A stretch of 64,000 nucleotides of DNA from Stegostoma tigrinum (lineage: Eukaryota): positions 1,736,001 to 1,800,000 of the forward strand of contig NC_081396.1 in NCBI RefSeq assembly GCF_030684315.1. The letters run 5' to 3'. The notes under the pieces are model-generated. The model did not search any database. It was not told where the DNA came from and saw nothing but the letters and a program-made list of their open reading frames with translations. The translations under genes were made by a program, and so were the position numbers. This document shows positions 378-45,387 of the stretch, in pieces. Position 1 is the first letter of the stretch. Each line of letters opens with the position of its first letter.

Positions 378-684
378 GACTTTGTCGAGGCGAATCTGTC
401 TCACAAACACCGTTTGTAATCACCGTGACTGAGGGAGATGATGTCCAGTTGTTTTGTAATTACACTGCTACAGCAAGCGACGATCCCAACCTGTTCTGGT
501 ACCGTCAGAAAACCAGCGGATCGATGGAGTATCTGTTACAGAGAAGCCGATATATCAGAAACATGGAAAGATTTCCAGGAGATCGGCTTTCCTCGGATTT
601 TGACCATGCGAACCGCATTATCCAGCTGAAAGTGCTGAAAACAGAACTGACCGACTCTGCAGTGTATTACTGTGCTTTGAGACC
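378..684 (+). CDS. T-cell receptor alpha/delta-type variable (V) gene segment, V exon; open frame
   Basis: Acceptor cttacAG (376-377), then GLCRG-ESVSQ...LFCNY...LFWYRQK...TDSAVYYCALR with canonical Cys, Trp and YYC, followed directly by a 23-RSS. Leader exon not resolved. Confidence 0.92.
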
Positions 685-723
685 CACAGAGGCTCAGGAC
701 AAAAGTAACGCTGTACAAAAAAT
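685..723 (+). other. V(D)J recombination signal sequence (23-RSS)
   Basis: Heptamer CACAGAG 685-691, exact 23-nt spacer 692-714, nonamer ACAAAAAAT 715-723 (consensus CACAGTG/ACAAAAACC). Confidence 0.9.
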
Positions 724-3700
724 GTCAGAACGTAACAGAACATGTAAATGTGTCAGGCAACCAGTGAGATCAGAAATAGATCAAAATACATGATGGTATT
801 CAATAATTTTACTAGAAAATATAGCTTTTTGTTATAAAAATGTCATTTAAATGAACAACTGTCAGTTTAATGAATGAAACATATCGTGTTTTTTTTTGTT
901 TTTAAGGAGTCCCAAAGTCACGTATTTCACTTTGGCAGCAATGAGTTGGCATAGAAATGCAGCAAATAACTTTGGTCCAGCAAAATCCTCCAGTGAAACA
1001 GAGAATTTCAAAACTCAGTTCAAGAGGCAATGATTTGTCGTAGTTTTCTAATAATGAAACACTAGGACAACCTGAATAAAGTCAAACACAATGTGTTTCA
1101 TTGAGCAACTTATTTTCTTATATTTCCGCTTTTGTAACGAAAACATTGTTGTGCTGAACTTTTTTAAACCTATTGCTAACATTTCTACTAACATAAATAC
1201 GAATTTGTTTCGAGGTATTTTGTACTTTTGATGTTTCTGTATGTGGTGATAATGTACATTTTTGACTCTACTCTTCTGGCCCTGTACTAGTGTACGCCTG
1301 ACAATAAAACCTAAATTTAAATGCTAACAAGCCCAGGAGAGCTGGTGATAGATTCACTGCTCCCAGGTAATGGACACATGTTTTATAATATCAGTAAGAA
1401 AGCTAGTACTCACATTGAAAAATACTAAACAAGTGAAAAGATTCAGTTGTATATGATTACTGGATGACAGCTGGCAGTGAAAGTTTCAGTCACACGAATT
1501 TTGTGCTGATAGTAACAGAAACTCAGTCGCTTAGTTTTGGTCACAAGTTGAAAGAAACAAGATAGCAGTGACCAAATATTAAACTAAAGTGACACTAAGT
1601 AAGAATCATATTCATTCACCGTGAAAATAAATTGAAATTCCTGCAGACAATAACTTTTTTTTTCTTTTGCTGTATTATGGCCTTGATTGGAAAAGCAAGA
1701 AAATCCTCCCTCATTCTGTTGCCTCCTCTGATTGGATAAAATCTGTTAGCTTCTGGCTCTATCGAAACCGTATTTTATGCTTAGCTGCCCTATTGCCCTC
1801 TTTCTTTCATATTGATTCTGCATCATTCTTTGTATCAAGTTTAATTATTTTCATTATTTACCCTGGACAGTTTTTTTTCCCATGTTATACTCGGAAACCT
1901 ATATGGAAACAAGATGTATTATTGTTTGTAAACTTCCACAAATCAAATATTAGCCTAGATTTCAGTGTCAAGCTGGAATTATTTCTCCGTTTGTTATGGT
2001 TTCGTAAAACAGATTCGGGACATTGCTATAATGCGGAGTTTATTTCAGAATGATATGGACAGATTTATGGATCTTCAGGGAAATCACATGCTGAGAGAGA
2101 ACACACAAAGGTGTTGAGATTTGGAAAAGAATCATCTCATTGAGTGGAGGAGCAGGTTCGAATTGGCAATTGGAGTCGTTCAACTTTTACTCATTGTGAT
2201 CTTGTGACCAGCTCTTTTACATTTATGTCAGGAGAGTTGATTGGGCACCACTTCCGGACAAGAAGAATATATCAATTGGCAATGAAACTAAAATAATTCA
2301 TCTTCAGTTTACTCAAAGTAATGATTAGCTCTGAATTGTAACAAAAAATAGTTTCTGCTCCGTATGGTCAAATCTACAATCAGGTCTCAGGCTAAAAGAA
2401 TTCAGCTTCAGCTCCCCAGTTCAAAACCGTTATGACGTTTGTAATTACATTGGCCATCGTGATTTGCTTGTTCCATGCTGTTCGAGCTATCTTGATCTGT
2501 AAAATTAAAAAATGCAACGATTTTCATTTGCAAGCAATAATGATCAAATAACCTTCACTTTAACAGGGTGATGTCGTTGTTTGTAGCATTTCCACTTATT
2601 TTATTAGCATTGATCATTGTTTCTTTAAAGGATTAGACATCACTTTATTCTAGAGTTTTCGAGCTTCAGTCTTGCAGGATAGAGTCATAATACCAAATTA
2701 GCATGCGATTGTATTTCTTTGGTTTCGTTGTTCTGGTGATGAGCAACATCTTGGTATAAATGATTTAATTGAGGACAGTTGAAATGTATAAACAGGCAAT
2801 ATATTCTGATTAAGCGTCGACATTATCGTCATTACTGTTCATAATATGTAAAAGGAATTAGCTGGACATAAAATGAAGATGGCAAGAATTTAGTGAAGAC
2901 GGTTATTCATTTTAATGTGCAGGACACTGACAACAATTGTTAAGAATCTGGAGGTTGAATAGTATGACATCTCAGTGATTTCCCAAAGGGAACAGAAAAA
3001 TCAATTTTACTAAATTCGGTTTTGCAGCATCAAACAATGGAAAGTAATTTCAATGGAAATAGAAAACCGATAGCATTCACTCTCCAGTTTAGCATCATTG
3101 GTGGATAGTGTCGATTCATCATTTTACAATACCCAACATAAGTCATAAGATTTATTTTTGATTTAGAAATATGGCAGAAATTGAATCTCCACGAAGCTTT
3201 TTAACAATTCACGACAGAAGGGGAGTCAGAAAGAGTCAAGGACAGATGGAGATCAATTCCTTCCAAGAGACGACTGAAGAGTTGTTGTCTTTGAGACGTC
3301 CAATCTTCGAGTGGGAAACTAAATAATATCTAATTACAATATATTACAAGTGGTTGCTTACAACGTCGCCAATAGTCTATTCTTCAGTGAATAGAATGCA
3401 ATGTTATTATTTTTCCTTCCGTTCTCAACCACTGAGAGTCCTACACTTACCACTGAGAATCCAAAACGCGGCACGAAGTCTTAGACTTGACCTGCCTTTT
3501 TGTCTCTAGTGTAAGATTGGCTGAACTGTAATGCTAACTGCCTGACATCGATGTAGCCTGCTACAGACAAACACTTACAACGACTCCAACATTTATCAGC
3601 TTCAGAGAGCAAGGGATCCTGATGACAATCGACAAAATTCTGTCCTTATTCCACTCAAGGAAATTCAATACCATTTCAATAAGAGATACTGCTGCCCAAG

Positions 3701-5529
3701 ATATCCGTACATAGTACAATGAAAAACAAATGCAGTAAAAAAAAAGTGGTCACAACTGTACACAATCTTGGTGGCATTCTGTTCCCACTTCTCCACTATC
3801 CCCAAATCTAAAGTTTCAAAATTTTGGTAATCATCACAAATGTTACTTTGCATTTTAATAAAATCCATTTTGATAAGCACACTATTTCTTGTCGGCCTTA
3901 CTACAAATACAATCCATAAATTACCATAATATGGTGATACTATATGCACTGTATGTATCGGAAGAATGACAAGAGATTGCATTCTTATCCAAAGTTTTAT
4001 CTAAGATAAAGCTAAAACCACAAGTAGAGTAAGTATGAGATGCCTTTTGAATTTTTTTTACAGGAATGTTTTGGTAAAGAGACATCTAAATTAAACCAAA
4101 AAAAAAGCCAGTGAGCCTTTTCTTTAAGTGGGAATAACAGAAGCAGCGTCAATCGACGGGGCCAGGCTCCCATAGAACCAGTTTCTTTTTGTTTGTTTTT
4201 TTGGTAGGGTTAGGAAGTTAGCTTTATGGCTATCTGTTTCTTTTCCTACTAAATCTAAAAGACGTCAATTGCATCCATCTCTGCCAGAATCACATGTGAC
4301 ACAATCTGTTTTACTGAATTTTCCTTTACCAAGTGTGTTTTATCTAATGTTGCAATATTGGGACAGTTTCTGTTTCATCATTTTAAAAAAGCCTTTGATT
4401 CTGTAAAGTTTATTTTTAATAAAGTTAAAGTTGTGCCAATTCCCCTTTCCTCTTTTATAGTTTATCCAGGCGTTAAAATAAATTGTGTTCTTCTTAATAA
4501 TGTGTCGTATGACCTATTTGTTTACATCTATGACACACACCATATACTTAGCTTTCATTAGATAAAAGTTAAGGTTCAGGCTATCTCCGTGATATCAATT
4601 CAGGGGAGGGGCTTGGTTGTTTTGATCCATGGCATATATGTGATTGTATGTCGTTTTTTTGAACAACGGGAGAAAGCCTCCTGAATTCAATGACAAGCTT
4701 TGATATAGACTTGAAAAATGTAACTGTAGATATCACCAAGATGCATTTCTCTGCGTTGAAGCTCTCACGAGTATGGCAGTTCAATCAAATGGTACAAAAC
4801 CTGTCTTGCACCATCGCCTCCTTCCATTGAATCATGTCTGCGACTGGAATATGCAAGAACATCTGGCCCCACGATTTGAGGCATCAAGTTTGTTTTCCAA
4901 AAGATCGTTTCTTGTTTCGATCAGTGCGTGTCATCCATCTAAAATTCCACTTTCGAGTCACTTTTTTTTATTTGTCAGGAAACAGCTTCTCGTATGGCAG
5001 ACTGTGTTCCACACTTGGCAACAACAGCAAACATGACCCTTCACTTCCACACTTCAAATATTGACCACGAGAAAACCACTATACTCTCCCAGTTCTCGCT
5101 AAAGCTGCAAAGCCCCAGAAAGTCATCGTGCTTGTCCCTCCATAGAGAGAAACAACTGTTGATGTGATTAACCAGAGAATCGTTCGTCCTCAGGCAAAGG
5201 GGGGAAACTGAAAAGACGGTGCCTTCATGGGAAACTTCAGACAGTGCAGAATTTAATCGACGCTGTTGACATTGCTCTGCACAACTAACCAATCCTCCAG
5301 CCGACTTAACTAACTGACCACAATGTTTCAAAAGTACAACTATGTCGTTCACTTTAATAATATGACAAACAGAAATCCTGAAACTGTAGATGTTTGTTTA
5401 TCAAACTGCAATTAAGATGCATGCTATAAAATGCTTTTCCCTGTGGAACTGCTTGGTTTAAATAAATATTGCACTTTTCACTTGTGTTGCAGAACTAAGT
5501 CCTATCGCTTCTTCAGCTTCCAAAAGACA

Positions 5530-5599
5530 ATGCATGGGGCAGTAAAAGGACTCTTTTATGTCATTTGTTATCCTATTATTGCTGTTATTGGTGTTCCAG
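5530..5599 (+). CDS. GPR139/GPR142-like orphan class A GPCR, copy 1, exon 1 (MHGAVKGLFYVICYPIIAVIGVP)
   Basis: ATG at 5530; 70-nt exon ending CCAG|GTAAGT; its phase-1 join to 9693 restores the TM1 GVPAN motif; conserved in all three duplicons. Confidence 0.88.
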
Positions 5600-7164
5600 G
5601 TAAGTCATGGTTGCCAAAAAAGGGGTTTTCTTTTTATTTTGAAAATCTCCAGAAAGGTAATATTTTCACTTTCAGGAATGTAGGGGGACAACAAACGGTT
5701 TCCACATTTCTTTTTTATGCGTGATATGATATTACAATGTGATTTGGTGAATGATAGAGTATTAATTGTGCTTGTACAATGGAATATTGCTAAATATCGT
5801 TTAATTCAATATGCTGCACTTTTATGGAAATGTTGTTTATTAGACTGCTGAATCATGACTTACAATTATTCGCAATGTCTGAATAAATGGTCTGATAGAA
5901 ACCTTTAATTTTAACTTTTCAAAAAGAAAATGAGTATTTGTTGTGCGACAGGATTTTTTAAAATATAAAGCGCCAACTTAACAAAATACCTCAATGCGTG
6001 GATTTCTTGCTGGAGCAGAATATTACTTATTCCATACAGTCATGATACTGACAAAATGTTGACACACAAAAATAAACACGTTCACTGAGTACAGAATTTA
6101 CAGTCCGACTTTTGCAAGAATGTAACAGTTGCAGTAGAGTGAGTGTCCACACATAAGCTCCAATTTTTAACGTAATCTGATGAACTAATTCGGCAAATAT
6201 TTGAAAACATCTGAACAGGCGAGAAGTTTAATCTATTGCTGGTGAATACTCGCTCCTGATGGGTTTTGCATATTGTTAAACACGCATAAACCATAATAGG
6301 CTATGCTGGCCGGAATCAATAATCACTGTTCATTGCGAGTTTCTGAGAATGGTGAAAGGTTAAAATCAAAACGGTTGGAATGATTTTAAGCAACATGCGA
6401 GACTAGTCAGGAACAGTTGACGACTGTCAGTGATGGAAGGCTTCGCCCCACATTGGGACAGTTGAAACCGAAATCATTGTAATTCTGCATTGTCAGTTGA
6501 CTGAACTCAGCTATTGCTCACATCAAGCATGTAAGGAAGATCAGTAGGCAAGGCACTGTTTTGAATTATTCAATCATTAAACTTATTTGTTTTTCCAACA
6601 CAAGTTTAAGTTTAGTAATTGATGTAAGTAACTCATGAAATGTGTCAGGAAGGAGCAAGACCAGAATGTGCACCATATTAACGTTGGAAAGAAAGCTCAA
6701 ATTAATTCACGGACATGTTTAAATTTATAAGCATCAATTCGGACGAAAGCAATATAAAAATATGAATTCAAGATTTAAAGAAATTTTCAAGAAATGATCT
6801 TCAAATCTATATAAGTCAAGGTTCAGCCATCTAATAAATGGTATTCCGTAATGATGCAGATATGAATTGAATAACGTGTTGTAACAGTCCATTCAGTGAA
6901 CACAATTAATATGGTATCATTCACAATATTAAAGTGCTATATCATATAACACATAAAAATACAAGAAATTTGCAAATTGAATAATTCATGAATTCATACA
7001 CAAATTATACAAATAACCACGTTCTCTTTTTTCACAATTTGCAGCAATTCTTTTCCAGGAAATCAGAGATAATGGGAACTGCAGATGCTAGAGAATCCAA
7101 GATAACAAAGTATGAAGGTGGATGAACACAGCAGGCCAAGCAGCGTCTCAGGAGCACAGACGCT

Positions 7165-7192
7165 GACGTTTCGGGCCTAGACCCTTCATCAG
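7165..7192 (-). ncRNA. Minimal type-I hammerhead ribozyme motif (PLE family A)
   Basis: CUGAUGA-AGGGUCUAGGCCC-GAAACGUC on the minus strand. Confidence 0.72.
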
Positions 7193-7259
7193 GGAGGGGG
7201 ATGGGGAGAGGGTTCTGAAAAATAGAGGGTTTTTCAGAAGCCTCTCCCCATCCCCCTCT

Positions 7260-7287
7260 CTGATGAAGGGTCTAGGCCCGAAACGTC
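7260..7287 (+). ncRNA. Minimal type-I hammerhead ribozyme motif (PLE family A)
   Basis: CTGATGA AGGGTCTAGGCCC GAAACGTC: core, stem II, palindromic stem III and GUC cleavage triplet. Confidence 0.72.
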
Positions 7288-9692
7288 AGCTTTTGTGCTC
7301 CTGAGATGCTGCTTGGCCTGCTGTGTTCATCCAGCTTCACACTTTGTTATATTTTCCACGAAATGCTGTTTTTTCTGATAACTTTGATTTGAACTGCAGA
7401 TGCAGGTTTTCACAATTTCTTTGGCCACATTGTCTGGCACTAGCTCCTGTGCTGAGTATGATAGATGACTATAGCGAAATAAATAAGTAAATACCAACGA
7501 TTCTGTCTGATAATGCTAAAACTTAAAAAGGACCAATTAAATTAGAGAACGGGAGAGTAGGAACTGGCCTATCCCTTCCCTACCTCACCACCTACATTCA
7601 CCTTCACTGGCTCTAACCCTGCCTCTTTGACCTGGCTGTCACCTCTCACCGTATCTTCTCCTTTATCCATCTTCTATCCGCCTCCCCCGTTTCCCTCTTT
7701 ATTTGAAAATCCCCTTCCCTTCCCCCACCTCTGAAGACATGGCCCGACCCAAAACGACAAGCTTTCCTGCTCCTCTGATGCTGCTTGGCCTGCTGTGTTC
7801 ATCCAGTTTCACATGGTGTTGTCTCAAATTAAACAACGATATTGATTGACTTAAAGTAAATTTATAAACATGCACCAATTCACGCAGCTTGCCCCCTCCT
7901 TGAATGTGTAAACTCTTCCATTTCCGGCCACATGCACCCTGGCATCTGTCACGAGACTGTGAGTGACGTTGAATAACTGTGGGTGACTGTATGTTGTAGT
8001 GATCACGATTGAGTGAGTTTGAGCCGTTCAATCGGTTCACAGTTCACTGTTGATGCTCACTTGTGACTCATATTTAGTCACAAATTGTAATATATTCCAA
8101 AGCAAATTGTAACTAAAAGTTACCAGTTCTTCTGCTTGATCCTGGTATAAAACTGTTGCAATATTGTAACGTGGCTCGGAGTTATAACTTGCAGCGCTTT
8201 TCTTTAAGAGTTCAAGGGATTTCCATTTCAGGATGAATTCAACTCATGAAGTCAAGGCCCTACTTGTTTCTTCAGCGACTGAAGAATGTATGGTGGGAAA
8301 TCGTCACGGGAACTTTAAACAAAACTCTGAAACCAAATTACATAACGTACAGAATGGGATCGAATATCCTGTGTTTTGAGGCGTACTCAAGCACAGAAGT
8401 TTAGGAGTACTGTTACTTTGAGATTTTACAATGTCGCTCCTTATAATGTCAACTTGGGTACAAACACATCGTTACAAATCTTAGATGCAAAAGAGGAATT
8501 AAAAAGAAATGTATTTGCATTACTTTATCATCATCAAACAATAAGACATCGAAATAAGACATAGTTAAAAGGAGATATATTACAGTCAGATAAACAATTA
8601 CAAATGAAGAGTATATTGCAGCCGCTGAGCTCAGAAACCTCGACACATGGAGTAACTGCCTGAACCTGACCTGAGTCGAACAACTGTCCCGGTTCCATTG
8701 TATGCGTCCAATGCATTCCGCCCCAGAAGGTAAGTCTTCACTGGGACTACTTCCATACATTGGCCTCTACCGAGGACTCGCTCCTCATGCTTTTAGGTTG
8801 CTTCAGGTCTGCTTACCCTGAGCTGGCCACTGCACCCGACTCACTCCCTCCAACAGCGGGTGCTCCCAGACTGCTTGCCCCGTGACAGCATCCAAATTGA
8901 AATTCGCCTACAGGCCTCTCCAGCTCCTCAATTCCCCACCAGTTTAGTCCAGTTCATTACTTGAAAACAAAATCGTGGGAAGCAGAAGAAAACATGAGAG
9001 AGAAAAGAAAAAGAGAAAGAAAGGAAAAGAACGGGTGGGGAAGAGCGGTTGCCACAGTAACTTGTAAATCTGCGGCAAACTTGTGGTGGTACTTTACTAA
9101 CATTTTCCTCAAAAATTTATCTAATCAGAAACGTCCGAAAGAAGGCAGTTTTCAAAAGAGTTATACATGTGAAGCTGAAGGCGAAACCAATAATGAAGGA
9201 AGACAGAATCTGAAGGCTTCAGAAAGTAATAGAATTAGAGGAGTGTGGAAAATGTAGATGATTGTTCTTGATCACCAAAATGGCAGCAGTGGGATTTTGA
9301 AGACATTTGAAAATTCAGTTGTTCTGATTGTTCAGACTGCAATGTTGGCGCATGGGAAGTCAACATATGTCAATAACCACAGAACTGTTGAATTTCTTAG
9401 TATTACTTACTAAGTAAGAAGGTATGTAAGGTGACCCATAAGTATTTTGGACAGTTTTGGGATGTGAAACCTAAACACGAGGGTAGATTCAGTGAACACA
9501 CAGTAGGTTTTGGGGTAGCAACTGACTTCAATGCCTTATATATTCACATACGTTTAGTCAAACAATAAACTTCAAATGGAATGTCCTTTGAATAGTCAAG
9601 AGTCTGAAGTTGTACTTTCGTAAAATACTGGATGAAACAGAGCCTAATGTTTCGAATAAGCTTAATAACATTTCTCTCTATTTCTTTCTCAG

Positions 9693-10591
9693 CCAATTTG
9701 CTAGCAATTGTAATCCTATCCCGAGGACGTTGTGGGCTCTCCAAATGCATCACCTGCTATCTGTTGGCAATAGCTGTCTATGATTGTCTCGTCATAATAA
9801 TTTCCGTAATCCTAAACAGGATTGGCCGCATTTATTTTGCGTACAGTGTCTTGTCAACCACCCCAGTGTGTAGCATTATTGCGGTGCTAGTGTATAGCAC
9901 ACGTGATGGCTCAGTCTGGCTGACAGTGGCCTTCACCATCGATCGTTTTGTTGCCATTTGCTGCCAGAAACTGAAGGCCAGATACTGCACTGAAAAAACT
10001 GTGTCATTGGTCATTGGAACAGTCTGCATCCTGAGCTGCATCAAGAATGTCCCTTTATACTTCATCTACAAGCCTTTGTACACAATTAGGGGAGTACCCT
10101 GGTTCTGCAATATCAAGTCCACTTATTACACATCTCCTGTTTGGCAGGCATACGACATGCTAGACCCTATCTTAATCCCCATTTTCCCATTTGTTCTCAT
10201 TTTTCTTCTCAATGCTTTGACTATAAAGCACATTTTAGTGGCCAACAGATCCCGTCAGAGGCTTCGTGGTATTGAGAACCATCAAGATCCTGAGATTATG
10301 AATCGCAAGAGATCCATTGTCTTGCTTTTTGCTATTTCACTCAGCTTTATCCTCCTGTGGGCTACCCAGGTCGGGCGTTTCCTCTACGTGCGAGTTAGAG
10401 GTGCAGGTTATTTCAACAGCCAGAATTTCAAAGACCCACAGTACATACTTTCAGAGACAACTAACATGCTCCAGCTACTCAGCTCCTGCAACAACGTTTT
10501 TATCTATGTCATGTCTCAGAATAAGTTTAGACAGGATGTTAAGGTGGTGATGAAATATCCCTTCATTATCCATAGGAGTTTATTCAAATGA
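9693..10591 (+). CDS. GPR139/GPR142-like orphan class A GPCR, copy 1, exon 2 (join 5530..5599,9693..10591; 322 aa)
   Basis: Polypyrimidine tract and AG at 9691-9692; seven hydrophobic segments; TVAFTIDRFVAIC (DRY-like); ECL2 WFC; TM7 SSCNNVFIY; helix 8 KFR; TGA at 10589. Confidence 0.92.
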
Positions 10592-19570: not shown

Positions 19571-19659
19571 TTTGTCAAGCACTTTGTCAAGTATCTGATA
19601 AGCTTGATTAAATTATTTGATAAGGTGGCACTGGCATGGAACAGGGTGGTATTATGGAC

Positions 19660-32556: not shown

Positions 32557-32595
32557 AGTTATTGTAGAAGGCTTATGGTCATCCCTGCCACTGTC
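32557..32595 (-). other. Degenerate 23-RSS of V pseudogene 2
   Basis: Minus strand: GACAGTG, 23 nt, then ACAATAACT. Confidence 0.8.
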
Positions 32596-32875: not shown

Positions 32876-33449
32876 CTGAAACACAAGTTTAAAGAAGCAG
32901 GATATTAGCATCAAATGTTTAACTAAGTTTACAGTAAATAATAAGAGTCACAGTTGTTCAATGTAAAAATAAATTGAATTTCCAGCAACTAATAACTTAT
33001 TCATTTTCTTTCTCTGCTCATGTCGGTGGTTGGAAACCCTACATCAGGTAGTAGCTGCCTCCTCTTGATCATACATATGCATCCTCTTTACATTGTGCAG
33101 GGTAGTCTCATGGCCCTCTGCTCCGCCATGAAGAAAAATCCTTAATCATCTCCAGTCACCATCACCTTTCTTCGTCTGAATTTCTGCCAGCTTCAGGTAA
33201 ACCATCACCAGACACATCCTGCTATCTCTGTCCAGCCTTCCCCGGGGACTTCACTCTTCGGGAAATCTTGGCTCACTCCTCCTCCTTTCCCAATCCTTTT
33301 TTTTCACACCCACAGTGCCTTACCATGTCATCTCGGAAAATTTAGCAGGTGCCCCTTTATGTCATGCCTCCTGACTATTCAGGAACCAAGATACATCCTC
33401 CAAGTGAAATATCACTCCAGTCAATCTGGCCTCATGTATTTGCTGCGAC

Positions 33450-34360: not shown

Positions 34361-37300
34361 CTATGATTCTATACATGATTCATACCGAAAAAGCATTCAC
34401 TCAATTTCAGATCATGCTTGTTTAAGTCCTTTCTAAATGAAGCAACTGAATAAACATTTCAAATATTTAACGTTTGCTATGCTTTGCAATTTTTTGCTGA
34501 ACGGTCAAAAAGCTAAGCATGATCATTTCTATAAGAAGTAAATAAATAGAACAGGATACGTTTTGCAAGAGTCAGCTCAACAGCGTAATTCATTGCCTTT
34601 CGAAGTTGATCACGTCTTTCGACCTGATATTGAGGACAGCAGAGGGCGCAGCGGAGATTGCGTTGAATGCTGGGGAGCAATTCTACTCGAGCAAAAAGAT
34701 TTTCTGTCAGGGTGTTTCTTTGAAAAGTAATCGATTCCACTTTTCAATACGTGGTTGTTACATGGCAAAGGTTTTTTTGTGTTTGCGATTGTCAAACTGT
34801 CACGTTTCTGCTTATATATGATGTGATCCATATTTTGTCTTGGTCCTTCATTGCTTGTGCCAGTAGAAACAGTTAGAAACCCTTCTTCCTGCAGTCTGAA
34901 TCGCGATGGGTTATCTATCTTGTTTAAATGTTGTTGCGACATTGGATATCAGCATTTTCACTAAGTTATTGTCAATACAATATTGACGTGTTTTAATGAT
35001 GAACACGTTTCTCTTTAAATTACTAGCTCGGAACAAGACACTTGAAAATTTCAATTACATTTATTGTGTTTCTCTGGCTTCGTTGTCCTGTTGGTCAGCA
35101 ACATTATTGGTGTAAATACTGTAATTGAGGACTGTTGTGATGTTTTCAGGAACTGTATTCCGATTAAGCATCTATATATTATCGCCATTCCTGTTCATAA
35201 TAAGTAAAAGGAATTAGCTGCACATTAAATGAAGATGGTATGTATTTAGTGAAGACGGTTATTCATTTTAATGTGCAGGACACTGACAACCATCATTAAG
35301 AGTCAGGAGTTTCGAACAGTATGAAACCTCAGTGATTTCCCAAATGGAACTTTCCTTATTTTCTCAACCACTGAGAGTCGGAAACTCGGCAGGATGCCTG
35401 AGCCATGTTGTTAGGTCATCGTGTTTGCACCAGGTTCTGAAAGAGTTACCTAGCTTTTGTCACTCTCCAGCCCTAGCTCTGTAGCTGTCCAAAACCATCC
35501 CTTTCAAATATATTTCCAAATTATTTTGAAACTTCACAAGGAACCTGCCTCTGCCTTTTCGTCTCTAGAGTAAGTTTGTCTGAACTGTAATGTTAACTGC
35601 CTGATGTCGATGTAGTCTGCTGCAGACAAACGCTTACAACGACTCCAACATTTATTAGCTCTGTACGGCAAGGTATCCAGATGACGAGAGACAAAATTCG
35701 GTCCTTAGTCCGCACCAGGAGATCCAATATCATTTCAATAAGAGATACTACTGCCCACAGTATTGGCACGTAGTATATTGCAAAATCAATGTCGTAAAAA
35801 AAAGTGTTCACATCTGCATAACAACTTGGTGGCATCCGGTTCCTATTTCCTCACTTTCCCCAAAGCTAGACCTTTATATATTTTGGTAATCATCACAAAT
35901 GTTACTTTGCATTATATTAAAAACCCATTTTGATAAACATACAATCTCTTGCCGACCTTACTACAAATACAATGCATTCAATACCATAGTGCGGTGATAC
36001 TATGTGCATTGTATTTATCGTAAGAGTGACAAGAGATTACATTCGTATCCAACGCTTTTATTAACATAAAGCGAAAAAAAACAAAGTAGAGGAAGCATGA
36101 GATGCATTTTGACATTTTAAAAGGAAGATTTTGGTAAAGAGATACCAAATTCAAACCAAAAAAGTAAACAGCTTGTGAGCCTTTTTTAAGCGAAAACAAC
36201 AGAAGCAGCATGAATCGATGGAACCAGGCTCCCATAGAAGCAAGGTTTTAATTTTAGCGTTTGGAAGTTAGCTTTAAAGCTGTCTGTTTCTTTCCCTACT
36301 AAATCTCAAAGACGTGAATTGTATCTCTCTGACAGCATCGCAAGTGACACAATCTATTCTAATGAATTTACCTTCGCCCAGTGCGCTTTATCGCATGTTG
36401 GTATATTGTGACAGTATCTGTTTCATCACTAAATAATCTTTGATTCTGCAACGTCTTTATTTTTACAGAGTTGAAATTTTAGCAATTCTTCTTTCATCTT
36501 TTACAATTTTACAGGGGGTTAAAATAAAGTGTGTTCTGCTTAATAATCTGTCGTGTAATCTATATATTTTTATCTCGGACACACACCTTATACTTACCTT
36601 TTGTAAGATAAAAGTTAGGATTTAGGCCATGTCCTTGATATTTTTACAGGGGAAATGCTTCGTTGCTCTGGCTCACAACATAAATGTGATTTTCTGTCCT
36701 TTTTTCTGAGCAACAAGAGAAATTCTCCAGGATTCAATGACAAGTTTTGATATCGACAACAAAAATGGAACTGTCGGTATCATCAAGTTGCATGCCTCTG
36801 CGTTGAAGCTCACACTAACACAGAAGTTCGATTAATTGTTAGGAATCAGTTCTGTTTTTTTTTACCAAAAGATGGTTGCTTGTTATGAAAAGTGCGTGTC
36901 CTCCCATTTAAAATTCCACTTTCTAGTAACTTTTTTATTCGTCAGGGAGTAGTTTCTCTTCTGACAGACTCTATTCCACACTTGAGAACAACACCAAACA
37001 TGACACTTCACTGCCACACTTCACACATTGACGACGAGAAAACCACTTTCGTCTCACAGTTACAGCTAAAGTTGCAAAGTCCCAGAAAGACTCAAGGAAA
37101 GGGGGAAGCTGGGAAGGTGGTGCCTTCATGGTAAACTGAAACCAGTGCAGAATTTCCTCGACTCTGTTGACGTCACTATACATAACTAATCAATTATCCA
37201 GCCGACTTAACTAATTGATCCCATTGTTTCAAAAGTCCAAGCAAGTCTTTCACTTTATTAATGTGACAAACAGAAATCCTGAAGCTGTGGATGTTTGTTT

Positions 37301-37439
37301 ATCGAACTGCAACTAAAGTGCGTGCTATAACATTCTTTTCCCTGTGGACCGTCTCAGTTCAAATAAATGTCGCACTTTTCGCTTGTGTTGCAGATTTAAG
37401 TTCTATGACTTCGCGGACTTCCTTGGCTTCTAAAAGACA

Positions 37440-37509
37440 ATGCATGGGGCAATAAAAGGACTCTTTTTTGCCATTTGTTATCCTGTTATCGCTGTTATTG
37501 GTGTTCCAG
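37440..37509 (+). CDS. GPR139/GPR142-like GPCR, copy 3, exon 1 (MHGAIKGLFFAICYPVIAVIGVP)
   Basis: ATG at 37440; 70 nt; CCAG|GTAAGT donor. Confidence 0.88.
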
Positions 37510-40500
37510 GTAAGTCAGGGTTGCCAAAAAAGGTGTTTCGTTTTAAGCGTCAAATTCTCCAGAAATGTAACTTCTTCACTTTCAGGAAAGTAGGGGACAT
37601 CAAACGGTTTCCACATTTCTTTTTTTATGCACGATATGACACTAAGCTGTTTTGTGGTGAATGATAGTGTCTTAATTGTCGTTGCTCAATGGAATATTGC
37701 GATATATTATTTAATTCAATCTGCTGCACTTTAATGGAAATGCGGTTTATTCGATTTCGAATCATGACTTACAATTACGTGCAAAGTAGGAAAAAATGGT
37801 CTGAGAGTAAGCTTTAATTTTAATTTCGCAAAACGGAAATGAGTATTTGTTGCACTACAGGATTTTTTTTAAATAAAGCGCCAACTTGCAAAACACCTCT
37901 ATGCGTGGATTTCTTGCCACAACAGAACATTACTTATTCCATGCAATCATGACAATATCAAAATGTTGACACAAGGAAAGACACGTTCACTGAATACAGG
38001 AAACTATAGTCCGACTTTTGCACGAATGTAACAATTGCAGCAGAATGAGTGTCCACACATATGGTCCAAATTTTTGACGTAATCTGATGACCTAATACGG
38101 CACATATTCGAAAATCTCTGAGCAGGTAAGAATTTTAATCTATTGTTGGTGAATATTCTCTCCTGATGGGTTTTGCATACGTTGAAAGATTGTTAATCGA
38201 TAACACACTGTGGTTGCCCGAATCAATAATCACTGTACATCACGAGTTTCTGAGAATGGTGAAAGGCTATAATCAAAATGGTTGGAATGATTTTAAGCAA
38301 CATGCGAGACCAGTCGGATACTATTGACGACTAAAGACAACGGAAGGCTTCTCCCCACACTGGGGCAGTTGAAATTGAAGGCATTGCAATTCTGCATTGT
38401 CAGGCGACTGATCGTGGTCTTTCGTTAGTGAGCTATTGCTCACATCAAGCATGTCAGGAAGATAAGTGTTCGAGGCACCGTTTTGAATTATTCAGGCTTG
38501 AACGTATTTGTTTATCCAACATGACTTTAAGTTTAGTATTGATGTGAGTAACTCATGATAAGTGTCAGGAACGAGCAAGTCCAGAATGTGCACCATATTA
38601 ATGTTGGAAGGAAAGCTCGAATTAATTCACGGACACGTTTAAATTTATTAGCATCAAATAGGACGAAAGCAATACGAAAATATAAATTCAAGATTCAAAG
38701 AAATTTTCAAGCAATGATCATCAAATCTGTACAAGTCAAGATTCAGCCATCTAATGAATGGCGTTCTCTCATGATGCAGATAACGAATTGAATAACATGT
38801 TGTAACAGTCCATTCTGTGAACACACTTAATATACTGTCATTCCCATATTGAAGACTTATATCATTTAATGCATAAAAATGCAGAAAATTTGAAAATTGA
38901 ATAATTCATTAATACACACACAAATTGTGCAAACAGCCATGCTCGTTTTTCATAATTTGAATCGATTCTTGCCCAGAAAATGCTGCTTTTTGCTGATGTC
39001 TTTGATTTGTACTGCAGATGCAGGTTTTCACAATTTCTTCTGCCACATTGTCTGGCACTAGCTCCTGTGCAGAGGATGAAAGATGACTATAGAGAAATAA
39101 ATAGGAAAATACCAACTGTTCTGTCCGGTAAAACAAAACTGACAAAGGACCAAATAAATTAGAGAACGGCATAGTGGGAACTGACATATCCCCTCCCTGA
39201 CTCCCCACAAACATTCTCCTTCACTGGCTCTAACCCCGCCTCTTTGACCTCTCACCCTATCTTCTCCTCTATCCACCTTCTATCCACCTCCCCCTGTTTC
39301 CATCTTTATTTCAAAATCTTCTTCGCCACCCCCATTTCTGAAGAAGGGCCCGACCCAAAACGACAAGTTTCCTACTCCTCTGATGCTGCTTGGCCTGCTG
39401 TGTTCATCCGGCTTCACCCAGTGTTACCTCAAATTAGATAATGATATTGATTGATCTAAAGTAAATTTATAAACATGCAACGTTTCACGCAGTTTGCCCC
39501 CTCCTTGATTCAGTAAACTCTTCCAATCCAGCCACATGCATTCTGCTGTCTGTGAGTGACGGTGAATGATTGGGGGTGACTGTATGTTATGGAGTGATTA
39601 TGACTGAGTGAGGTTAAGCCGTTCAACCCCATATTACAGTTCACTGTTGATGTTCACTTGTCGCTCATATTTATTCACAAATTGTGATGAATTGTACTGC
39701 AAACTGTAACTAAAATATAAGTTACCAGTTCTTCTGCTTGATCCTGGGACAAACCTGTTGCATTGTAAACAGACATGGAGTAACAGCTCCCAGTTTTTTT
39801 TTAAGAATTCAAGGGATTTCTATTTCAGGGCGAATTCAACTCATGAAGTCAAGGTTCTGTTTGTTTCTGAAGCGACTGCACAATGTATGGTGGGAAAGAG
39901 TCACGGGAACTTTAAACAAAACCATGAAAACAAATTGCCTGATTTATAGAATAGAATCGAATATCCTATGCTTTGAGGTGTACTCAAGCACAGAAGTACA
40001 GGAGTACAGTGATTTTTTTTTTACAATGTCGCTGCTTATAATGTCATCTTAGGTACAAATCTTAGGTGCAAAAGAGGAATTTAAAAGGAACGTCTTTGCA
40101 TTACTGTACCGTTGTCAACCAATAAGCTGGAAATAAGACATAGTTTAAAGGACAGATATTACAGTCAGATAGCCAGTTACAAATGAGTAGTACATTGCAG
40201 CCGCTGAACTCAGGGACCTCGACACGTGGAGTAACTGCCTGCACCAGACCTGAGTGCAACAAATGCCCCCATTGCGTTGCAGGCCACCAGTGCATTCTGC
40301 CCCAGCTGTCAGCTTCTCCAAGGTAAGTTTTCTCCGTGACTAATTCCTTGCATTGGCCTCTGCCCAGGACTCGCTCCCAGCGCTTGTTGCTGCTTCAGGT
40401 CTGCTCACCCTGGGCTGGTCACTGCACGGGACTACCTCCCTCCAACAGCCGGTGCTCCCAGACTGCTGCCCCGTGAAATCCTCCACAGTGGAATTCGCTT

Positions 40501-41294
40501 CCAGGGCTCCCCGGCTCTACAGACTGCACCCCCCCCCCCCAATTTAGTTCAGTTCATTAGTTGAAAAGAAATTCATGGGACGCAGAAGAGAAGAAGAGAG
40601 AGAGAAAAGAGAAAGAAAGAAAAACAACAGGTGGAGCAGAATGGTTACTGCAGAAACGTTTAAATCTGCACCCAACTTGTGGTGGTCGTTTGCCAACATT
40701 TTCCTCAAACATTTATTTAATCAGAAACGTTCTAAAGAAGGCAGATTGCAAAAGAGTTAAACACATGACGCTGGAGGTGAAACTAATAATGAAGGAAGAC
40801 AAAAAAAGGAAGGCTTCAGAAAGTAGCAGAATTGGCGGGAGTGGAAAACGCAAATGATTGTTGTTTATCACCAAGACAGCAGGAGCGAGATTTTGAAGCC
40901 ATTTGAAAATTCAGTAGTTCTGATTGTACAGACTGCAATGTTGGTGCATGGAAAGTCAAAAAATGTCAACAAGCATAGAACTGTTGATTTTTTTTTTGTG
41001 AATATTACCTACTAAATAAGAAAATAAGTGAGATGATCAGTGAGTATTTTGGATGGCGTTGAGATTTGAAACCTGAACACAAGGGTAGATTCAGTGAACA
41101 CGCAGTAAATTCTGTGACAGCAACTGACTTCAATGACTTATGTATTCACACAAGTTTAGTCAAACAATAAAACTCAACGAAATGCCCTTTGAATAGTCAA
41201 GAGTCAGACGTTGTACTTGAGCAATGTACTGGGTGTGACAGTAGCTAATGTTTGGAGTAAGTTTAATAACATCTCTCTCTTTTTCTTTCGTCAG

Positions 41295-42196
41295 CCAATT
41301 TGCTGGTAATTGTAATCCTATCCCAAGGACGTTGTGGGCTCTCCAAATGCATCACATGCTATCTGTTGGCGATAGCTGCCTATGATTTTCTCGTCATAAT
41401 AATTTCCGTAATCCTAAACAGGATTGGCCGCATTTACTTTATGTACACTGTCTTGTCAACCACCCAAGTGTGTCGCCTTATTGCTGTGCTGGTGCACAGC
41501 ACGCGGGATGGCTCAGTCTGGCTGACAGTGGCCTTCACCATCGATCGTTTTGTTGCCATTTGCTGCCAGAACCTGAAGATCAGATACTGCACTGAAAAAA
41601 CTGCGTCATTGGTCATTGGAACAGTCTGCATCCTGACCTGCATCAAGAATATGCCTTTATACTTCATCTACAAGCCTTTGTACACAATTAGGGGAGTACC
41701 CTGGTTCTGCAATATTAGGTCCACCTATTACACATCTCCTGTCTGGCAGGCATACGACATGCTAGACCCTATCTTAATCCCCATCTTCCCATTCGTTCTC
41801 ATTTTTCTTCTCAATGCTTTGACTGTAAAGCACATTTTAGTGGCCAACAGATCCCGTCAGAGGCTTCGAGGTGTTGATAATCGTCAAGATCCTGAGATTA
41901 TGAATCGCAAGAGATCCATTGTTTTGCTTTTCGCTATCTCGCTCAGCTTCATCCTCCTGTGGGCGACACAGGTTGGGCGTTTCCTTTACGTACGAATTAG
42001 AGGTGTGGATTATTTCAACAGCCAGAATTTCAATGACCCACAGTACATACTTTCAGAGACGACTAATATGCTCCAGCTACTCAGCTCCTGCAACAACGTT
42101 TTTATCTATGCCGTGTCTCAGAATAAGTTTAGAGAGGAGCTAAAGGTGTTGGTGAAGTATCCCTTCACCATCCATAGGAGTTTATTCAAAAGATAG
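41295..42196 (+). CDS. GPR139/GPR142-like GPCR, copy 3, exon 2 (join 37440..37509,41295..42196; 323 aa)
   Basis: AG at 41293-41294; intact 7TM ORF; the TGA of the other copies is AGA here, adding one residue before TAG. Confidence 0.92.
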
Positions 42197-44229
42197 AAAA
42201 ACAAAATTTCTCCATCTTAATTCTCTTTTATCAGTTTGTAACACTTTTCCACGAATTCAGATCTGAATTTTGCGGATAGAGCTTCCTGATTTGAATGGTG
42301 TGAAGTCCATTGTCCAACTGAGGTAGTTCTCGATTATTAATTCCAAAGGACTCAGAAATCATCGGAGCTCTGGTCTTTCAGGATGAGATGCTCAGGCAGG
42401 GATCAAACCTGCACTCATCAGTTCAATTCTGCAGTGCTCTGGGCCTATGTTGATTTATTTACTTTTTTTTCATTTCAATCACTCACTCTCCCTCCTCCCT
42501 TCCTTTTAAACTTCCTCCAAGCCTTTGTTTCTTGTTTCTGTACTGTCATCACGATATGACACAATTTCTCCTCTAGCTTATTGAAACGTGAATTCTGTTT
42601 TCTTCCCAGCGATGTTGTCAGATCTGCTAAGCATCTACAGCATGTTATGTTGAAATTTTCCTTGAGTTACTTCCTCAAGGCTACTCCTTTAGCATTATGA
42701 GTCCACTGACTGAAAGTCAATATACATATGTGAGATGTTGTACAAGTTTAAGAACTTGACTCTACTTTACAAGTCTCCAGGGAATGGTCGACAATCTGGT
42801 TCCAGTGGGAACTTCTTGGATGTTTGAACTCCTAAGGGTAATGATTCCACCTTAGTTTTTGGCATCCTGTAGAGCAACTGTGCCCACAATGTTCCTTCCA
42901 CCCTCTTTGTACTTTTTTTTTCAAAACCTTACTCATTCCTTATTGGTCAACTTCAGAATGAACATGAGTCCAAAATATCACATGTGCCATGTTTTCTCTG
43001 TGACCTGGACGGAAGCTATAAAACTGTAACAAGTCTAGAATGTATCTTTTCAGTGATTCTCTTCTCCACCAAACCTTGATTCTTTTAAGCTTTCAAGGTG
43101 TTAGTTTCAGGATGGGGAGATATGAGTGCGTGGACTCATAAACAGAGAAGATCTAGAAGTTTATTCTACTTTTGAAAGTCGTTCAATGAACTGATTCAGA
43201 ACTAAAGACGTTTAAAATGCAGTTCTTTTGTAATTCTGTGTTATTAGACTAGCATTAATGACACTTCAAAAGGATGTTCTATAACCTTCCTCGGTTTCAT
43301 CGATCCCATTGCATATTGCACAATCTTGTTCCTTTGCAACCTGTGAGTCATTCCATATCTGTGCATGTTAATGAACCCTTGTGTAATTCTGTAGCCTTCA
43401 GTACAACGTGGATAAGTACTGCCAAAATTCTGCGAAATCTATGTTTTCTTTAGAGTTTGTTGAAGCATAAATATGCATCACACATAAACATCAGAACAGT
43501 TGAAGTCAGAGCGGATTATTCCATTTGGCCCTTGAGTTTGGGCCATCATTCCATAAGACCACGGTTGATGGCACAGCTGCTGAAAACCCACATTCCTTCT
43601 GGTCTCTATGAACATTGGCTTTCATAGAAATCCGCGTTACAAAACAAAAAAAAACGTAACAGTTGATGCAGGACTTCAGCTGCAGCAATATGGCAGAGAC
43701 AAATTGGCGCTCCTGGCAGATCACCGGGAGCTTTCATTGCATCACTGGTGGCATGATGTCATTGTGGGATCAGGGTCGTACTTCTGGAATGCAGCAGCGA
43801 CAAAAGTGGCCTCAGAGTGTTATTCCTGGAATTTACTGCATTACATGGGAGTTGCTGAAACCAGAGCTGTTGTGAGAACAATCCCCCAATGTGGAGATGA
43901 GCACAAAAAGGGAGAGAAAACTGAGATTTTGATTATTTTCTGTGATATCTGAATACCTTCTGTAACTCAAAATGGGGCCTGAGCATGGCAAAACCATACG
44001 TTTTACAATGTATTTGTTATGCAAGTGACACTAAGTCATTCAATTCAATTTCTAATATAGCATGGTAGCATTGTTAGCGTCTAGTGCAAGCAGTGATAAA
44101 GGACAATTGGACAATTGGTGTTACAGATTCTCAAATGATCTTCAAGAAGTATATAACTTGTTGGGACGATTTCATAAACGGGGCTGAGAAAGGAATACAT
44201 CCAGTTCCAGAACATTGCGCATCAAATAT

Positions 44230-44750
44230 GTAGAACATAGAACAAAGAAAATAGAACATTACAGCACAGAACAGGCCCTTCAGCCCACCATGGTGTGCCG
44301 ACCATTGATCCTCATGTATGCACCCTCAAATTTCTGTGACCATATGCAAATCCAGCAGTCTCTTAAATGACCCCAATGACCTTGCTTCCACAACTGCTGC
44401 TGGCAACGCATTTCATGCTCTCACAACTCTCTGTGTAAAGAATCCGCCTCTGACATCCCCTCTATACTTTCCTCCAACCAGCTTAAAACTATGACCCCTC
44501 GTGCTAGCCATTTCTGCCCTGGGAAATAGTCTCTGGCTATCAACTCTATCTATGCCTCTCATTATCTTGTACACCTCAATTAGGTCCCCTCTCCTCCTCC
44601 TTTTCTCCAATGAAAAGAGACCGAGCTCAGTCAACCTCTCTTCATAAGATAAGCCCTCCAGTGCAGGCAGCATCCTGGTAAACCTCCTCTGAACCCTCTC
44701 CAAAGCATCCACATCTTTCCTATAATAGGGTGACCAGAACTGGACGCAGT
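44230..44750 (-). mobile_element. CR1 LINE 3' end (5'-truncated)
   Basis: ALERVQRRFTRMLP...LSYEERL...RRRGDLIEVYKIMRG, ending in a short repeat tail; absent at the paralogous site (~14585). Confidence 0.88.
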
Positions 44751-45387
44751 ATGTGTGCCCAACTTGCTGATTTCACCTAGAATCATTGTACGTATCTAAC
44801 CGTTTGTTGGAATGTTTGTGCATATGCAACTCTTGGTGTGTTTGTGTGCATGTGTTTAGTGTATGTGTGTGTATGTTTTTACATGTTTGTGTGCATTGTT
44901 TTAATAGCCTTGTGACCTTGTGTGTTGCACGTTTGTATGGGATTGAGTGTGGGTATTTGAAAACACCAGTTTGAGGTTTCGCCTCCATATGTAAATTTGG
45001 AGGTGATTGCAAGCCTGTCCCTAAATGCCTATGTAGTTTTGGCATATGAAACCATGTACATGCGTTCAAAGCATTAAGATGACTTGTTTTGGACGGACAA
45101 ACGAAACCTCATTGGACTCACCATGCCCAATTTCCTGACGGTTTAAATAAATTGAATTTTCAAGGCGTTATTCAGTCGAAAATGAACCAATTCCATTGAA
45201 AGGTCCAACTCACAGTGTCATCTGTGACTGCCCCTTCAAGCCAGCCACCTTCCTGACTTGGAAATAAAGCACAATTCCATCCGTGTCACCGGAACAAATA
45301 GGCACAGCTGCCTTCCAACCAATATCCCTGGTGTCCCCACACTCCAGGGGCAGGAACAGTTCAATCATGCAGCTCACTGTCATCTTT

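What the first reader, a model, noticed from the sequence alone, without database searches (positions are those of the whole stretch)
378..45290. Orphan GPCR genes interleaved with TCR V segments: a V-GPCR tandem cassette
Seen: the order is intact V+23-RSS (+), GPCR1, V-psi (-), GPCR2, V-psi (-), GPCR3, and V-psi and GPCR lie inside one repeated unit. Established: olfactory receptor genes are interspersed among the distal V segments of the mammalian TRA/TRD locus. Inference: here an unrelated GPR139/142-like receptor family holds the analogous position. These receptors could share T-cell locus accessibility and be inverted or deleted clonally by V(D)J recombination, linking a 7TM receptor repertoire to TCR rearrangement.
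Basis: partly seen in the sequence, partly recalled or inferred. Interest (0 to 1): 0.88.

Follow-up and report, generated by a model that had tools for sequence, protein, structure and literature searches.

The report
Shark GPCR genes among TCR V segments
In the zebra shark, three working copies of a little-known receptor gene related to GPR139 sit between T-cell-receptor V segments and were copied together with an already dead V segment. This looks like passive co-amplification of two gene families, as with olfactory-receptor genes in the mammalian TCR alpha/delta locus, not a functional link.

Summary
The window is zebra shark (Stegostoma tigrinum), on a 16.4-Mb contig.

- **V(+):** a TCR alpha/delta-type V exon (378-684) is open, has the canonical Cys/Trp/YYC residues and abuts a good 23-RSS (685-723).
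- **Repeat units:** three tandem units of 13-16 kb follow, 80-87% identical. Each carries one GPR139-like class A GPCR gene. Units B and C also carry an inverted V pseudogene.

- The GPCRs are two-coding-exon genes with a ~4-kb intron in TM1, so all three are intact (322/322/323 aa). dN/dS is 0.17-0.32.
- The two V pseudogenes share stops, frameshifts, loss of Cys23 and a dead heptamer, so the V died before the duplication and rode along.
- V(+) lies outside the repeat, and unit A has no V pseudogene.
- The N gap is intergenic.

The GPCRs are not GPR139 orthologues (E 1e-16). They belong to a large family that I found described in no paper, and it also occurs on other chromosomes.

No RNA run was available, so T-cell, lymphoid or olfactory expression is untested, and J/C segments were not located.

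Best reading: passive co-amplification. The scan noted the same pattern in other windows of this chromosome.

The parts
378..684 (+). TCR alpha/delta-type V exon (L-part2 plus V region), open frame with Cys23, Trp41 and YYCALR
   Evidence: Best solved-structure hits are TCR alpha chains. Relatives include teleost proteins named 'TCR alpha/delta variable'.
685..723 (+). 23-RSS: heptamer CACAGAG, 23-nt spacer, nonamer ACAAAAAAT
1798..15165 (+). Repeat unit A. It lacks the piece that holds the V pseudogene. It contains a TE insertion at 12211-13966 and the N gap at 14649-14798.
   Evidence: Self-BLAST.
5530..5599 (+). GPCR1 coding exon 1 (ATG, 23 codons plus 1 nt, donor CAG|GTAAGT)
   Evidence: The product matches the NCBI model P0001.
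9693..10591 (+). GPCR1 coding exon 2 (from mid TM1 to the stop codon). The spliced product is 322 aa.
   Evidence: DNA contigs of 4 runs cover it without indels.
15868..31583 (+). Repeat unit B
18043..18364 (-). V pseudogene B with RSS relic (heptamer GACAGTG 18081-18075, nonamer ACAATAATT 18051-18043). Stops, frameshifts and loss of the splice acceptor.
24374..24443 (+). GPCR2 coding exon 1
29322..30220 (+). GPCR2 coding exon 2. The spliced product is 322 aa.
31582..45289 (+). Repeat unit C
32557..32875 (-). V pseudogene C with RSS relic (heptamer GACAGTG 32595-32589, nonamer ACAATAACT). It shares its lesions with copy B.
37440..37509 (+). GPCR3 coding exon 1
   Evidence: The product is 100% identical to the NCBI model P0002.
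41295..42196 (+). GPCR3 coding exon 2. The spliced product is 323 aa. The apparent frameshift at about 41290 lies in the intron.

Best explanation
This is a stretch of the zebra shark chromosome that carries TCR alpha/delta-type V segments. Here a lineage-expanded, GPR139-like family of class A GPCR genes is interspersed with those V segments.

- Shown: an ancestral unit of about 15-17 kb, holding one two-exon GPCR gene and one inverted V segment, was amplified at the DNA level. Unequal crossing-over is the inferred mechanism.
- Shown: the V segment was already dead at that time.
- Shown: the GPCR copies were kept by purifying selection, and the V copies are passengers.
- Shown: V(+), at the left edge, is a separate V exon whose open frame and 23-RSS are those of a usable segment.
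- Inferred: the GPCRs are autonomous genes whose expression has nothing to do with V(D)J recombination. If J/C lie downstream, T cells that rearrange V(+) or a more distal V simply lose these genes on that allele. The same happens to olfactory receptor genes in the mammalian TRA/TRD locus and to trypsinogen genes in TRB.
For: Species and family:
- GPCR1 is 99% identical to a Stegostoma tigrinum protein on a 16.4-Mb contig.

Gene structure:
- Two-exon models with consensus donor and acceptor sites are conserved in all three units. They match the NCBI models P0001 and P0002.

Selection:
- dN/dS is 0.17-0.32. dS is 0.17-0.20, similar to the non-coding divergence of 13-20% between units.

V pseudogenes:
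- Copies B and C align without frame-changing gaps. They share stop codons in both candidate frames, loss of Cys23, and a CAC-to-GAC change in the heptamer.

Timing:
- G1, G2, G3 and one whale shark gene form one clade (support 99/95), with a bamboo shark gene as sister. The amplification is therefore old, not an assembly duplicate.

Family distribution:
- About 110 clusters at 50% identity score E<=1e-30.
- Members lie on several chromosomes.
- Over-long gene models of family members carry hemopexin, integrin, Na-channel or uromodulin-like domains, read here as fusions with neighbouring genes, and never V-set domains.

Precedent:
- Olfactory receptor genes are interspersed with TRAV segments in mammals (PMC2275272).
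Against: - Expression was not testable. A lymphoid role is therefore not excluded.
- Unchecked first-reader notes of this scan place V/GPCR interleaving from about -190 kb to +7.8 Mb on the same contig.
- Five of the six closest Stegostoma relatives, and 10 of the 11 whale shark relatives among the listed best hits, sit on one small contig each. This persistent, Mb-scale association could reflect more than chance co-amplification.
- J/C alpha/delta were not located by me.
Confidence: 0.7

Rival explanations
1. Functional coupling. The GPCR genes are expressed in T-lineage cells, share the accessibility of the V array, and are clonally deleted or inverted by V(D)J recombination. The receptor repertoire of a T cell would then depend on its TCR rearrangement.
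For: - GPCRs and V(+) are co-oriented, and V(+) has a usable-looking 23-RSS.
- The association recurs along the chromosome according to unchecked scan notes.
- The GPCRs are under purifying selection, so they do something.
Against: - There are no expression data of any kind.
- The V segments inside the duplicated unit were dead before duplication.
- The family also lies on other chromosomes and beside unrelated genes.
- Deletion of intervening DNA is an automatic by-product in every TCR locus.
- No cryptic RSS flanks the GPCRs beyond chance.
Confidence: 0.06
2. GPCR cluster with V debris. The region is essentially a GPR139-like receptor cluster, and the V segments in it are non-working orphons or relics that do not take part in TCR rearrangement.
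For: - Two of the three V segments are dead.
- No L-part1 leader was found within 377 nt of V(+).
- J/C were not located.
Against: - The V(+) exon is open, with all canonical residues and a heptamer/nonamer that keeps CAC and the A-tract.
- The leader may lie beyond the window start.
- Scan notes report many V and NAR-TCR V segments on the same contig, and one was confirmed by a follow-up agent.
- Elasmobranch TCR alpha/delta V exons are published as scattered among linked IgH clusters (PMC12227049).
Confidence: 0.15
3. Undescribed chemosensory family. The GPR139-like genes are an olfactory or other chemoreceptor repertoire of elasmobranchs, which have very few OR/TAAR/ORA genes. Their place in the V array is incidental.
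For: - The family is large and evolves by birth and death, with tandem arrays.
- The N-terminus is short.
- From recall, the closest solved receptor, GPR139, senses aromatic amino acids.
- A TATA box, an O/E-like site (TCCCTGTGGA) and an AT-rich homeodomain-like site lie upstream of exon 1 in all three units. Other scan notes report similar modules.
- The literature reports a paucity of shark GPCRs and ORs without mentioning this family.
Against: - The promoter stretch is no better conserved than neutral background among the three units.
- Putative pocket positions are not more variable than the rest of the protein.
- The coding sequence is split, unlike OR/TAAR genes.
- A catshark survey found no GPCRs among the top 50 genes specific to the 'brain & olfactory epithelium' library (PMC11979771).
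- There are no expression data.
Confidence: 0.2
4. Assembly artefact. The three units are collapsed or duplicated haplotypes, or a mis-join at the N gap.
For: An N gap lies in unit A at 14649-14798.
Against: - The units differ by 13-20% in non-coding DNA and about 7% in coding DNA, far above allelic levels.
- The units have different indels and a private TE insertion.
- GPCR1 and GPCR3 match separate annotated genes, P0001 and P0002. GPCR2 is a distinct paralogue of its own, 93% identical to GPCR1 in protein and with dS 0.20 to both other copies.
- Independent DNA contigs match GPCR1 specifically.
- The gap flanks are collinear with unit C.
Confidence: 0.02

Closest known systems
Olfactory receptor genes interspersed with TRAV segments at the 5' end of the mammalian TRA/TRD locus (PMC2275272; PMC3457774)
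   Same: An unrelated class A 7TM multigene family lies between V segments of the alpha/delta type. It would be lost passively when distal V segments rearrange.
   Different: - The GPCR family here is GPR139-like, not OR.
- V pseudogene and GPCR were amplified as one tandem cassette.
- According to unchecked scan notes, the interleaving spans megabases, not only the locus edge.
- The genes have two coding exons.
Trypsinogen genes embedded in the TCR beta locus (recalled from Rowen, Koop and Hood 1996; not checked here)
   Same: A non-immune multigene family sits inside a rearranging TCR locus with no known functional tie to rearrangement.
   Different: Different locus, different protein class, and no co-duplicated V-plus-gene unit that I know of.
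Human GPR139 (PDB 7VUG, 9M42)
   Same: - It is the best solved-structure match, aligned over the full 7TM length.
- Shared features include DR(F/Y) in TM3, LWA in TM6 and a proline-less N-x-F-x-Y motif in TM7.
   Different: - The match is weak (E 1e-16).
- It is not an orthologue. Coelacanth and anchovy proteins named 'GPR139' by NCBI are equally far from human GPR139.
- Of the agonist-contact residues I recall, W6.48 and the TM7 Asn are kept, F3.33 is Tyr, and the His in TM5 and the Arg in TM6 are replaced.
Elasmobranch antigen-receptor complex, AgRC (Flajnik et al. 2025, PMC12227049)
   Same: - It has the same kind of chromosome: TCR alpha/delta V exons scattered over a large region with linked IgH clusters.
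- Scan notes place IgM and IgNAR remnants and NAR-TCR V segments on this contig.
   Different: The paper does not mention any GPCR genes in the complex. Zebra shark was not among its four mapped species.

Membership tests
Rearranging TCR alpha/delta V gene segment (V+ at 378-723) | V-set Ig domain with Cys23, Trp41 and the Tyr-Tyr-Cys104 motif in an open frame | tested here: met
   TCR alpha chains are the top solved-structure hits.
Rearranging TCR alpha/delta V gene segment (V+ at 378-723) | 23-RSS directly 3' of the V coding end | tested here: met
   CACAGAG, 23-nt spacer, ACAAAAAAT at 685-723.
Rearranging TCR alpha/delta V gene segment (V+ at 378-723) | Split leader: L-part1 exon with ATG and a phase-1 intron | tested here: inconclusive
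   A phase-1-compatible acceptor is present at 376-377. No convincing hydrophobic L-part1 lies in 1-377. It may lie beyond the window start.
Rearranging TCR alpha/delta V gene segment (V+ at 378-723) | Linked J and C alpha/delta segments, and use in transcripts | not testable with these tools
Scan notes did not name J/C.
GPR139/GPR142 receptors | Orthology or high similarity to GPR139 | tested here: not met
   E 1e-16 to human GPR139. Bony-vertebrate proteins labelled 'GPR139' are equally distant from it. This is a sister-like family named by best hit.
GPR139/GPR142 receptors | Class A 7TM fold with family motifs (DRY-type TM3, W6.48, proline-less TM7 motif) | tested here: met
   7tm_1 E 5e-16. 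Residue-level alignment.
GPR139/GPR142 receptors | Conserved agonist pocket residues (list recalled from mutagenesis work) | tested here: inconclusive
   Two are kept, one is conservatively changed and two are replaced, read from the alignment. The residue list is from memory.
Vertebrate odorant-type chemoreceptor families | Large tandem arrays evolving by birth and death | tested here: met
Vertebrate odorant-type chemoreceptor families | Expression in olfactory sensory neurons | not testable with these tools
   No RNA run.
Vertebrate odorant-type chemoreceptor families | Conserved O/E plus homeodomain promoter module | tested here: inconclusive
   The motifs are present. The region is not conserved above background among the three paralogous units.
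Vertebrate odorant-type chemoreceptor families | Single coding exon | tested here: not met
   Two coding exons with a ~4-kb intron in TM1.
Non-immune gene family embedded in a TCR locus | Genes lie between V segments of one locus | tested here: met
   The order is V(+), G1, V-psi, G2, V-psi, G3.

The most novel reading that the evidence does not exclude
The Mb-scale intermingling of a large, selectively maintained GPR139-like receptor family with the shark TCR alpha/delta V array is functional. One possibility is that the receptors are expressed in T-lineage cells and are clonally edited by V(D)J deletion. Another is that both families use a shared stochastic-choice chromatin domain.
Probability: 0.06. 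Interest if true: 0.9.

Novelty: new variant of a known kind. Interest (0 to 1): 0.5.

Why it matters
Non-immune gene families embedded in TCR loci are known, but here the guest is a different family.

- It is a large GPCR family that I found described in no paper, in a lineage said to be poor in GPCRs and odorant receptors.
- It was amplified in one cassette with V segments.

If expression data place these receptors in olfactory neurons, they could bear on how sharks smell. If the data place them in lymphocytes, the locus would be a natural case of receptor genes subject to somatic deletion. Either way, the family deserves annotation in maps of the elasmobranch antigen-receptor complex.

Tried and rejected
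- **Intronless 319-aa ORFs as the genes.** Rejected. Their first 20 codons are intronic. The frameshift of GPCR3 disappears in the two-exon model.
- **A third V relic at 1479-1655** (an ESFSH... peptide plus an RSS-like site). Alignment scores to the V segments equal those of shuffles. Treated as chance.
- **Leader exon of V(+).** No acceptable candidate in 1-377.
- **RNA evidence.** The one run search found only DNA runs. Laying them showed continuous genomic contigs and no splice joints.
- **V-set domains fused to GPCR models in other species,** as a proxy for adjacency. None found.
- **Hypervariable ligand pocket across 101 family members.** Mean entropy of putative pocket positions is about 1.16 bits, by my estimate about the same as the protein-wide level. 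No signal.
- **Promoter footprint.** No excess conservation.
- **Literature.** No paper links GPR139 or GPR139-like genes with sharks, skates or cartilaginous fishes. The AgRC paper has no GPCR mention.
- **Spliced models.** The joined GPCR2 model was sent to no search tool. GPCR1 and GPCR3 were searched only through the identical database proteins P0001 and P0002. Exon joining was done only inside local scripts, for translation, dN/dS and the tree.
- **N gap.** Neither filled nor looked up.
Full report
**Source.** GPCR1 is 99% identical to a Stegostoma tigrinum protein annotated 'probable G-protein coupled receptor 139' on a 16,414,262-bp contig. The next hits are other zebra shark, whale shark and bamboo shark proteins. 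The window is therefore zebra shark.

**The V segment with RSS.**
- After a polypyrimidine tract and an AG at 376-377, an open V exon runs from 378 to 684. It encodes ...GESVSQTPFVITVTEGDDVQLFCNY...LFWYRQ...DSAVYYCALR.
- It is directly followed by the heptamer CACAGAG (685-691), a 23-nt spacer and the nonamer ACAAAAAAT (715-723).
- With up to 3 mismatches to the consensus 23-RSS, the window has 4 matches against 1.0 expected. No shuffle reached 4. Two of the four sit at V 3' ends.
- The domain's best solved relatives are TCR alpha chains. Its database relatives are shark and chimaera V domains and teleost proteins named 'TCR alpha/delta variable'.
- I found no acceptable L-part1 leader in the 377 nt upstream. 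The window may start too close to the V exon. 'Intact' is therefore shown only for the V exon and the RSS.

**The GPCR genes.**
- Three + strand ORFs hit Pfam 7tm_1.
- The NCBI models P0001 (GPCR1) and P0002 (GPCR3, 100% identical) begin with a 23-codon exon about 4 kb upstream.
- In all three units this exon has an ATG in good context and a CAG|GTAAGT donor. The large exon is preceded by a pyrimidine tract and a CAG acceptor.

| Gene | Exon 1 | Exon 2 | Product |
|---|---|---|---|
| G1 | 5530-5599 | 9693-10591 | 322 aa |
| G2 | 24374-24443 | 29322-30220 | 322 aa |
| G3 | 37440-37509 | 41295-42196 | 323 aa |

- All three are open. The start of the 'intronless' ORFs, and the apparent frameshift of GPCR3, lie in the intron.
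- Pairwise dS is 0.17-0.20 and dN/dS is 0.17-0.32.
- Non-coding DNA of the units is 79-87% identical. In a three-way comparison, exon 2 stands out at 0.82-0.96 invariant columns against a background of 0.65-0.82.
- All three copies have therefore been kept under purifying selection since duplication.

**The V pseudogenes.**
- On the - strand at 18364-18082 and 32875-32596 lie two V-like exons: GESVTQ......ATLN(R/T)xY......FFW......YYCAV.
- They align to each other without frame-changing gaps, apart from one 3-nt indel.
- They share stop codons in both candidate frames.
- They share the two frame changes needed to read the 5' end, body and 3' end.
- They share loss of Cys23 and a heptamer changed from CAC to GAC (GACAGTG, 23-nt spacer, ACAATAA(C/T)T).
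- Copy B has additionally lost its splice acceptor and has further stops.
- The V segment was therefore dead before units B and C separated.

**The repeat.** Self-comparison gives unit A at 1798-15165, unit B at 15868-31583 and unit C at 31582-45289.
- B and C are collinear from the V pseudogene to beyond the GPCR.
- A lacks the 4.6-kb piece with the pseudogene (junction 2703/2708 against 16774-21424).
- B lacks the 3-kb tail that A and C have.
- A carries a private 1.76-kb insertion with 550-bp inverted arms (12211-13966).
- V(+) lies left of unit A and has no DNA similarity to the pseudogenes.
- The N gap (14649-14798) is in the non-coding tail of A. Both flanks are collinear with unit C, where the corresponding interval is 673 bp. 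The gap touches no gene, and I did not fill it.

**Age and independent DNA support.**
- In a tree of 46 family members, G1, G2, G3 and one whale shark gene form a clade (support 99/95), with a bamboo shark gene as sister (100/100).
- The triplication therefore dates to around the zebra shark / whale shark split.
- Many other branches are cross-species orthologue pairs, as in birth-and-death families.
- Four DNA runs (two samples, one study) cover GPCR1 with contigs that run through exon 1, intron and exon 2 and show no indels.

**What the GPCR family is.**
- The best solved match is human GPR139 (E 1e-16), aligned over all seven helices. Ghrelin, cholecystokinin and galanin receptors follow.
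- Shared features are DR(F/Y), LWA in TM6 and a proline-less N-x-F-x-Y motif in TM7.
- It is not a GPR139 orthologue. Coelacanth and anchovy proteins with the same automatic name are just as far from human GPR139.
- Against 1.84 billion representatives, 110 clusters at 50% identity score E<=1e-30.
- The 120 best 90%-identity clusters are all elasmobranch.
- The nearest outside relatives (31-34% identity) are in newts, axolotl, coelacanth and a silverside.
- Members lie on several zebra shark contigs: 16.4, 13.97 and 108 Mb.
- Over-long gene models of family members carry hemopexin, integrin alpha, sodium channel or uromodulin-like domains, which I read as fusions with neighbouring genes. None carries a V-set domain. 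The family is therefore not confined to antigen-receptor loci.
- Even so, five of the six closest zebra shark relatives, and 10 of the 11 whale shark relatives among the listed best hits, sit on one small contig each.

**Literature.**
- No paper in the library links GPR139 or 'GPR139-like' with sharks or cartilaginous fishes in substance.
- The whale shark genome paper speaks of a relative paucity of GPCRs in cartilaginous fishes (PMC8455134).
- The catshark sensory paper lists tiny OR/ORA/TAAR repertoires and no GPCR among the top 50 genes specific to its 'brain & olfactory epithelium' library (PMC11979771).
- Flajnik et al. 2025 describe the elasmobranch antigen-receptor complex, in which TCR alpha/delta is linked to IgM, IgW and IgNAR clusters and V exons are scattered between them. 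They do not mention GPCRs (PMC12227049).
- Olfactory receptor genes interspersed with one or two TRAV segments at the 5' end of the mammalian TRA/D locus are documented (PMC2275272; PMC3457774).

**Context from this scan (unchecked notes).**
- V/GPR139-like interleaving is noted at about -190 kb, -16 kb, +0.3 Mb, +3.7-3.9 Mb and +7.3-7.8 Mb on the same contig.
- NAR-TCR V segments are noted at +3.7-4.0 Mb, and one of them was confirmed by a follow-up agent.
- IgM and IgNAR remnants are noted at +2-3 Mb.
- One GPR139-like array is noted on another piece.
- The pattern in this window is therefore one instance of a chromosome-wide feature. No note names J or C alpha/delta.

**Mechanism.**
- Shown: DNA-level tandem amplification of a unit that holds a live GPCR and a dead V, followed by selection on the GPCR only.
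- Inferred: the amplification mechanism is unequal crossing-over in a duplication-prone array, and V segments and GPCRs are neighbours without a shared function.
- If J/C lie downstream on the + strand, use of V(+) or of a more distal V would excise GPCR1-3 on that allele. This is a by-product common to all TCR loci.

**Tests that gave no signal.**
- A TATA box, an O/E-like site (TCCCTGTGGA) and an AT-rich site lie upstream of exon 1 in all units. The stretch is no better conserved than background. A possible acceptor just upstream of the ATG leaves the true promoter uncertain.
- Putative pocket positions are not hypervariable across 101 members.
- No RNA run was found.

**Handling of spliced models.** The joined GPCR2 model was sent to no search tool. 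GPCR1 and GPCR3 were searched through the identical database proteins P0001 and P0002.

**Verdict.** The GPCRs are ordinary in mechanism: passive co-amplification, analogous to OR/TRAV. They are noteworthy as a large receptor family that I found described in no paper and that lives inside the shark antigen-receptor chromosome.

Noticed in passing
window 12211-13966 (copies at 46154-46783 and 54619-55786): A GC-rich element of about 1.76 kb with ~550-bp inverted arms (94% identical) is inserted only in unit A. Its 426-aa ORF (12455-13735) has no Pfam hit. It is probably a transposon whose ORF spans its own inverted repeat.
   Followed up: partly
window 6970-7954 (GPCR1 intron): Very high-copy repeats. 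Summed contig depth in four DNA runs is 1e5-1e7, against about 10-50 in the flanks, with hundreds of variant joints. Probably SINE or satellite-like elements.
   Followed up: no
window 6395-6529, 25232-25366, 38302-38451: The N-terminal 50 residues of a whale shark GPR139-like model (P0003) match a stretch inside the intron of all three units at 66-80% identity. This is either an alternative first exon or a mispredicted exon in a shared repeat.
   Followed up: no
window 50807-51652: An ORF with an endonuclease/exonuclease/phosphatase domain, that is, a LINE fragment. The region 46-58 kb has strong positive GC and AT skew.
   Followed up: no
window 56995-57850: Two blocks of 40-nt tandem repeats in a GC-rich (0.57), strongly G-skewed stretch.
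   Followed up: no
window 60383-62570: Two runs of 84-nt periodic repeats with ORFs and a weak zf-H2C2_2 hit. Probably C2H2 zinc-finger arrays just right of the cassette.
   Followed up: partly
window 1617-1655: An RSS-like site (CACCGTG, 23-nt spacer, ACAATAACT) with no V in front. A faint V-start-like peptide at 1479-1520 does not align to any V above shuffle level.
   Followed up: yes
protein family (P0001-P0120): Intracellular loop 1 (LSRGRCGLSKC) is nearly invariant across 101 elasmobranch family members, as are W160/C162 in extracellular loop 2 and W174. This is an unusually conserved ICL1 for a diversified receptor family.
   Followed up: no
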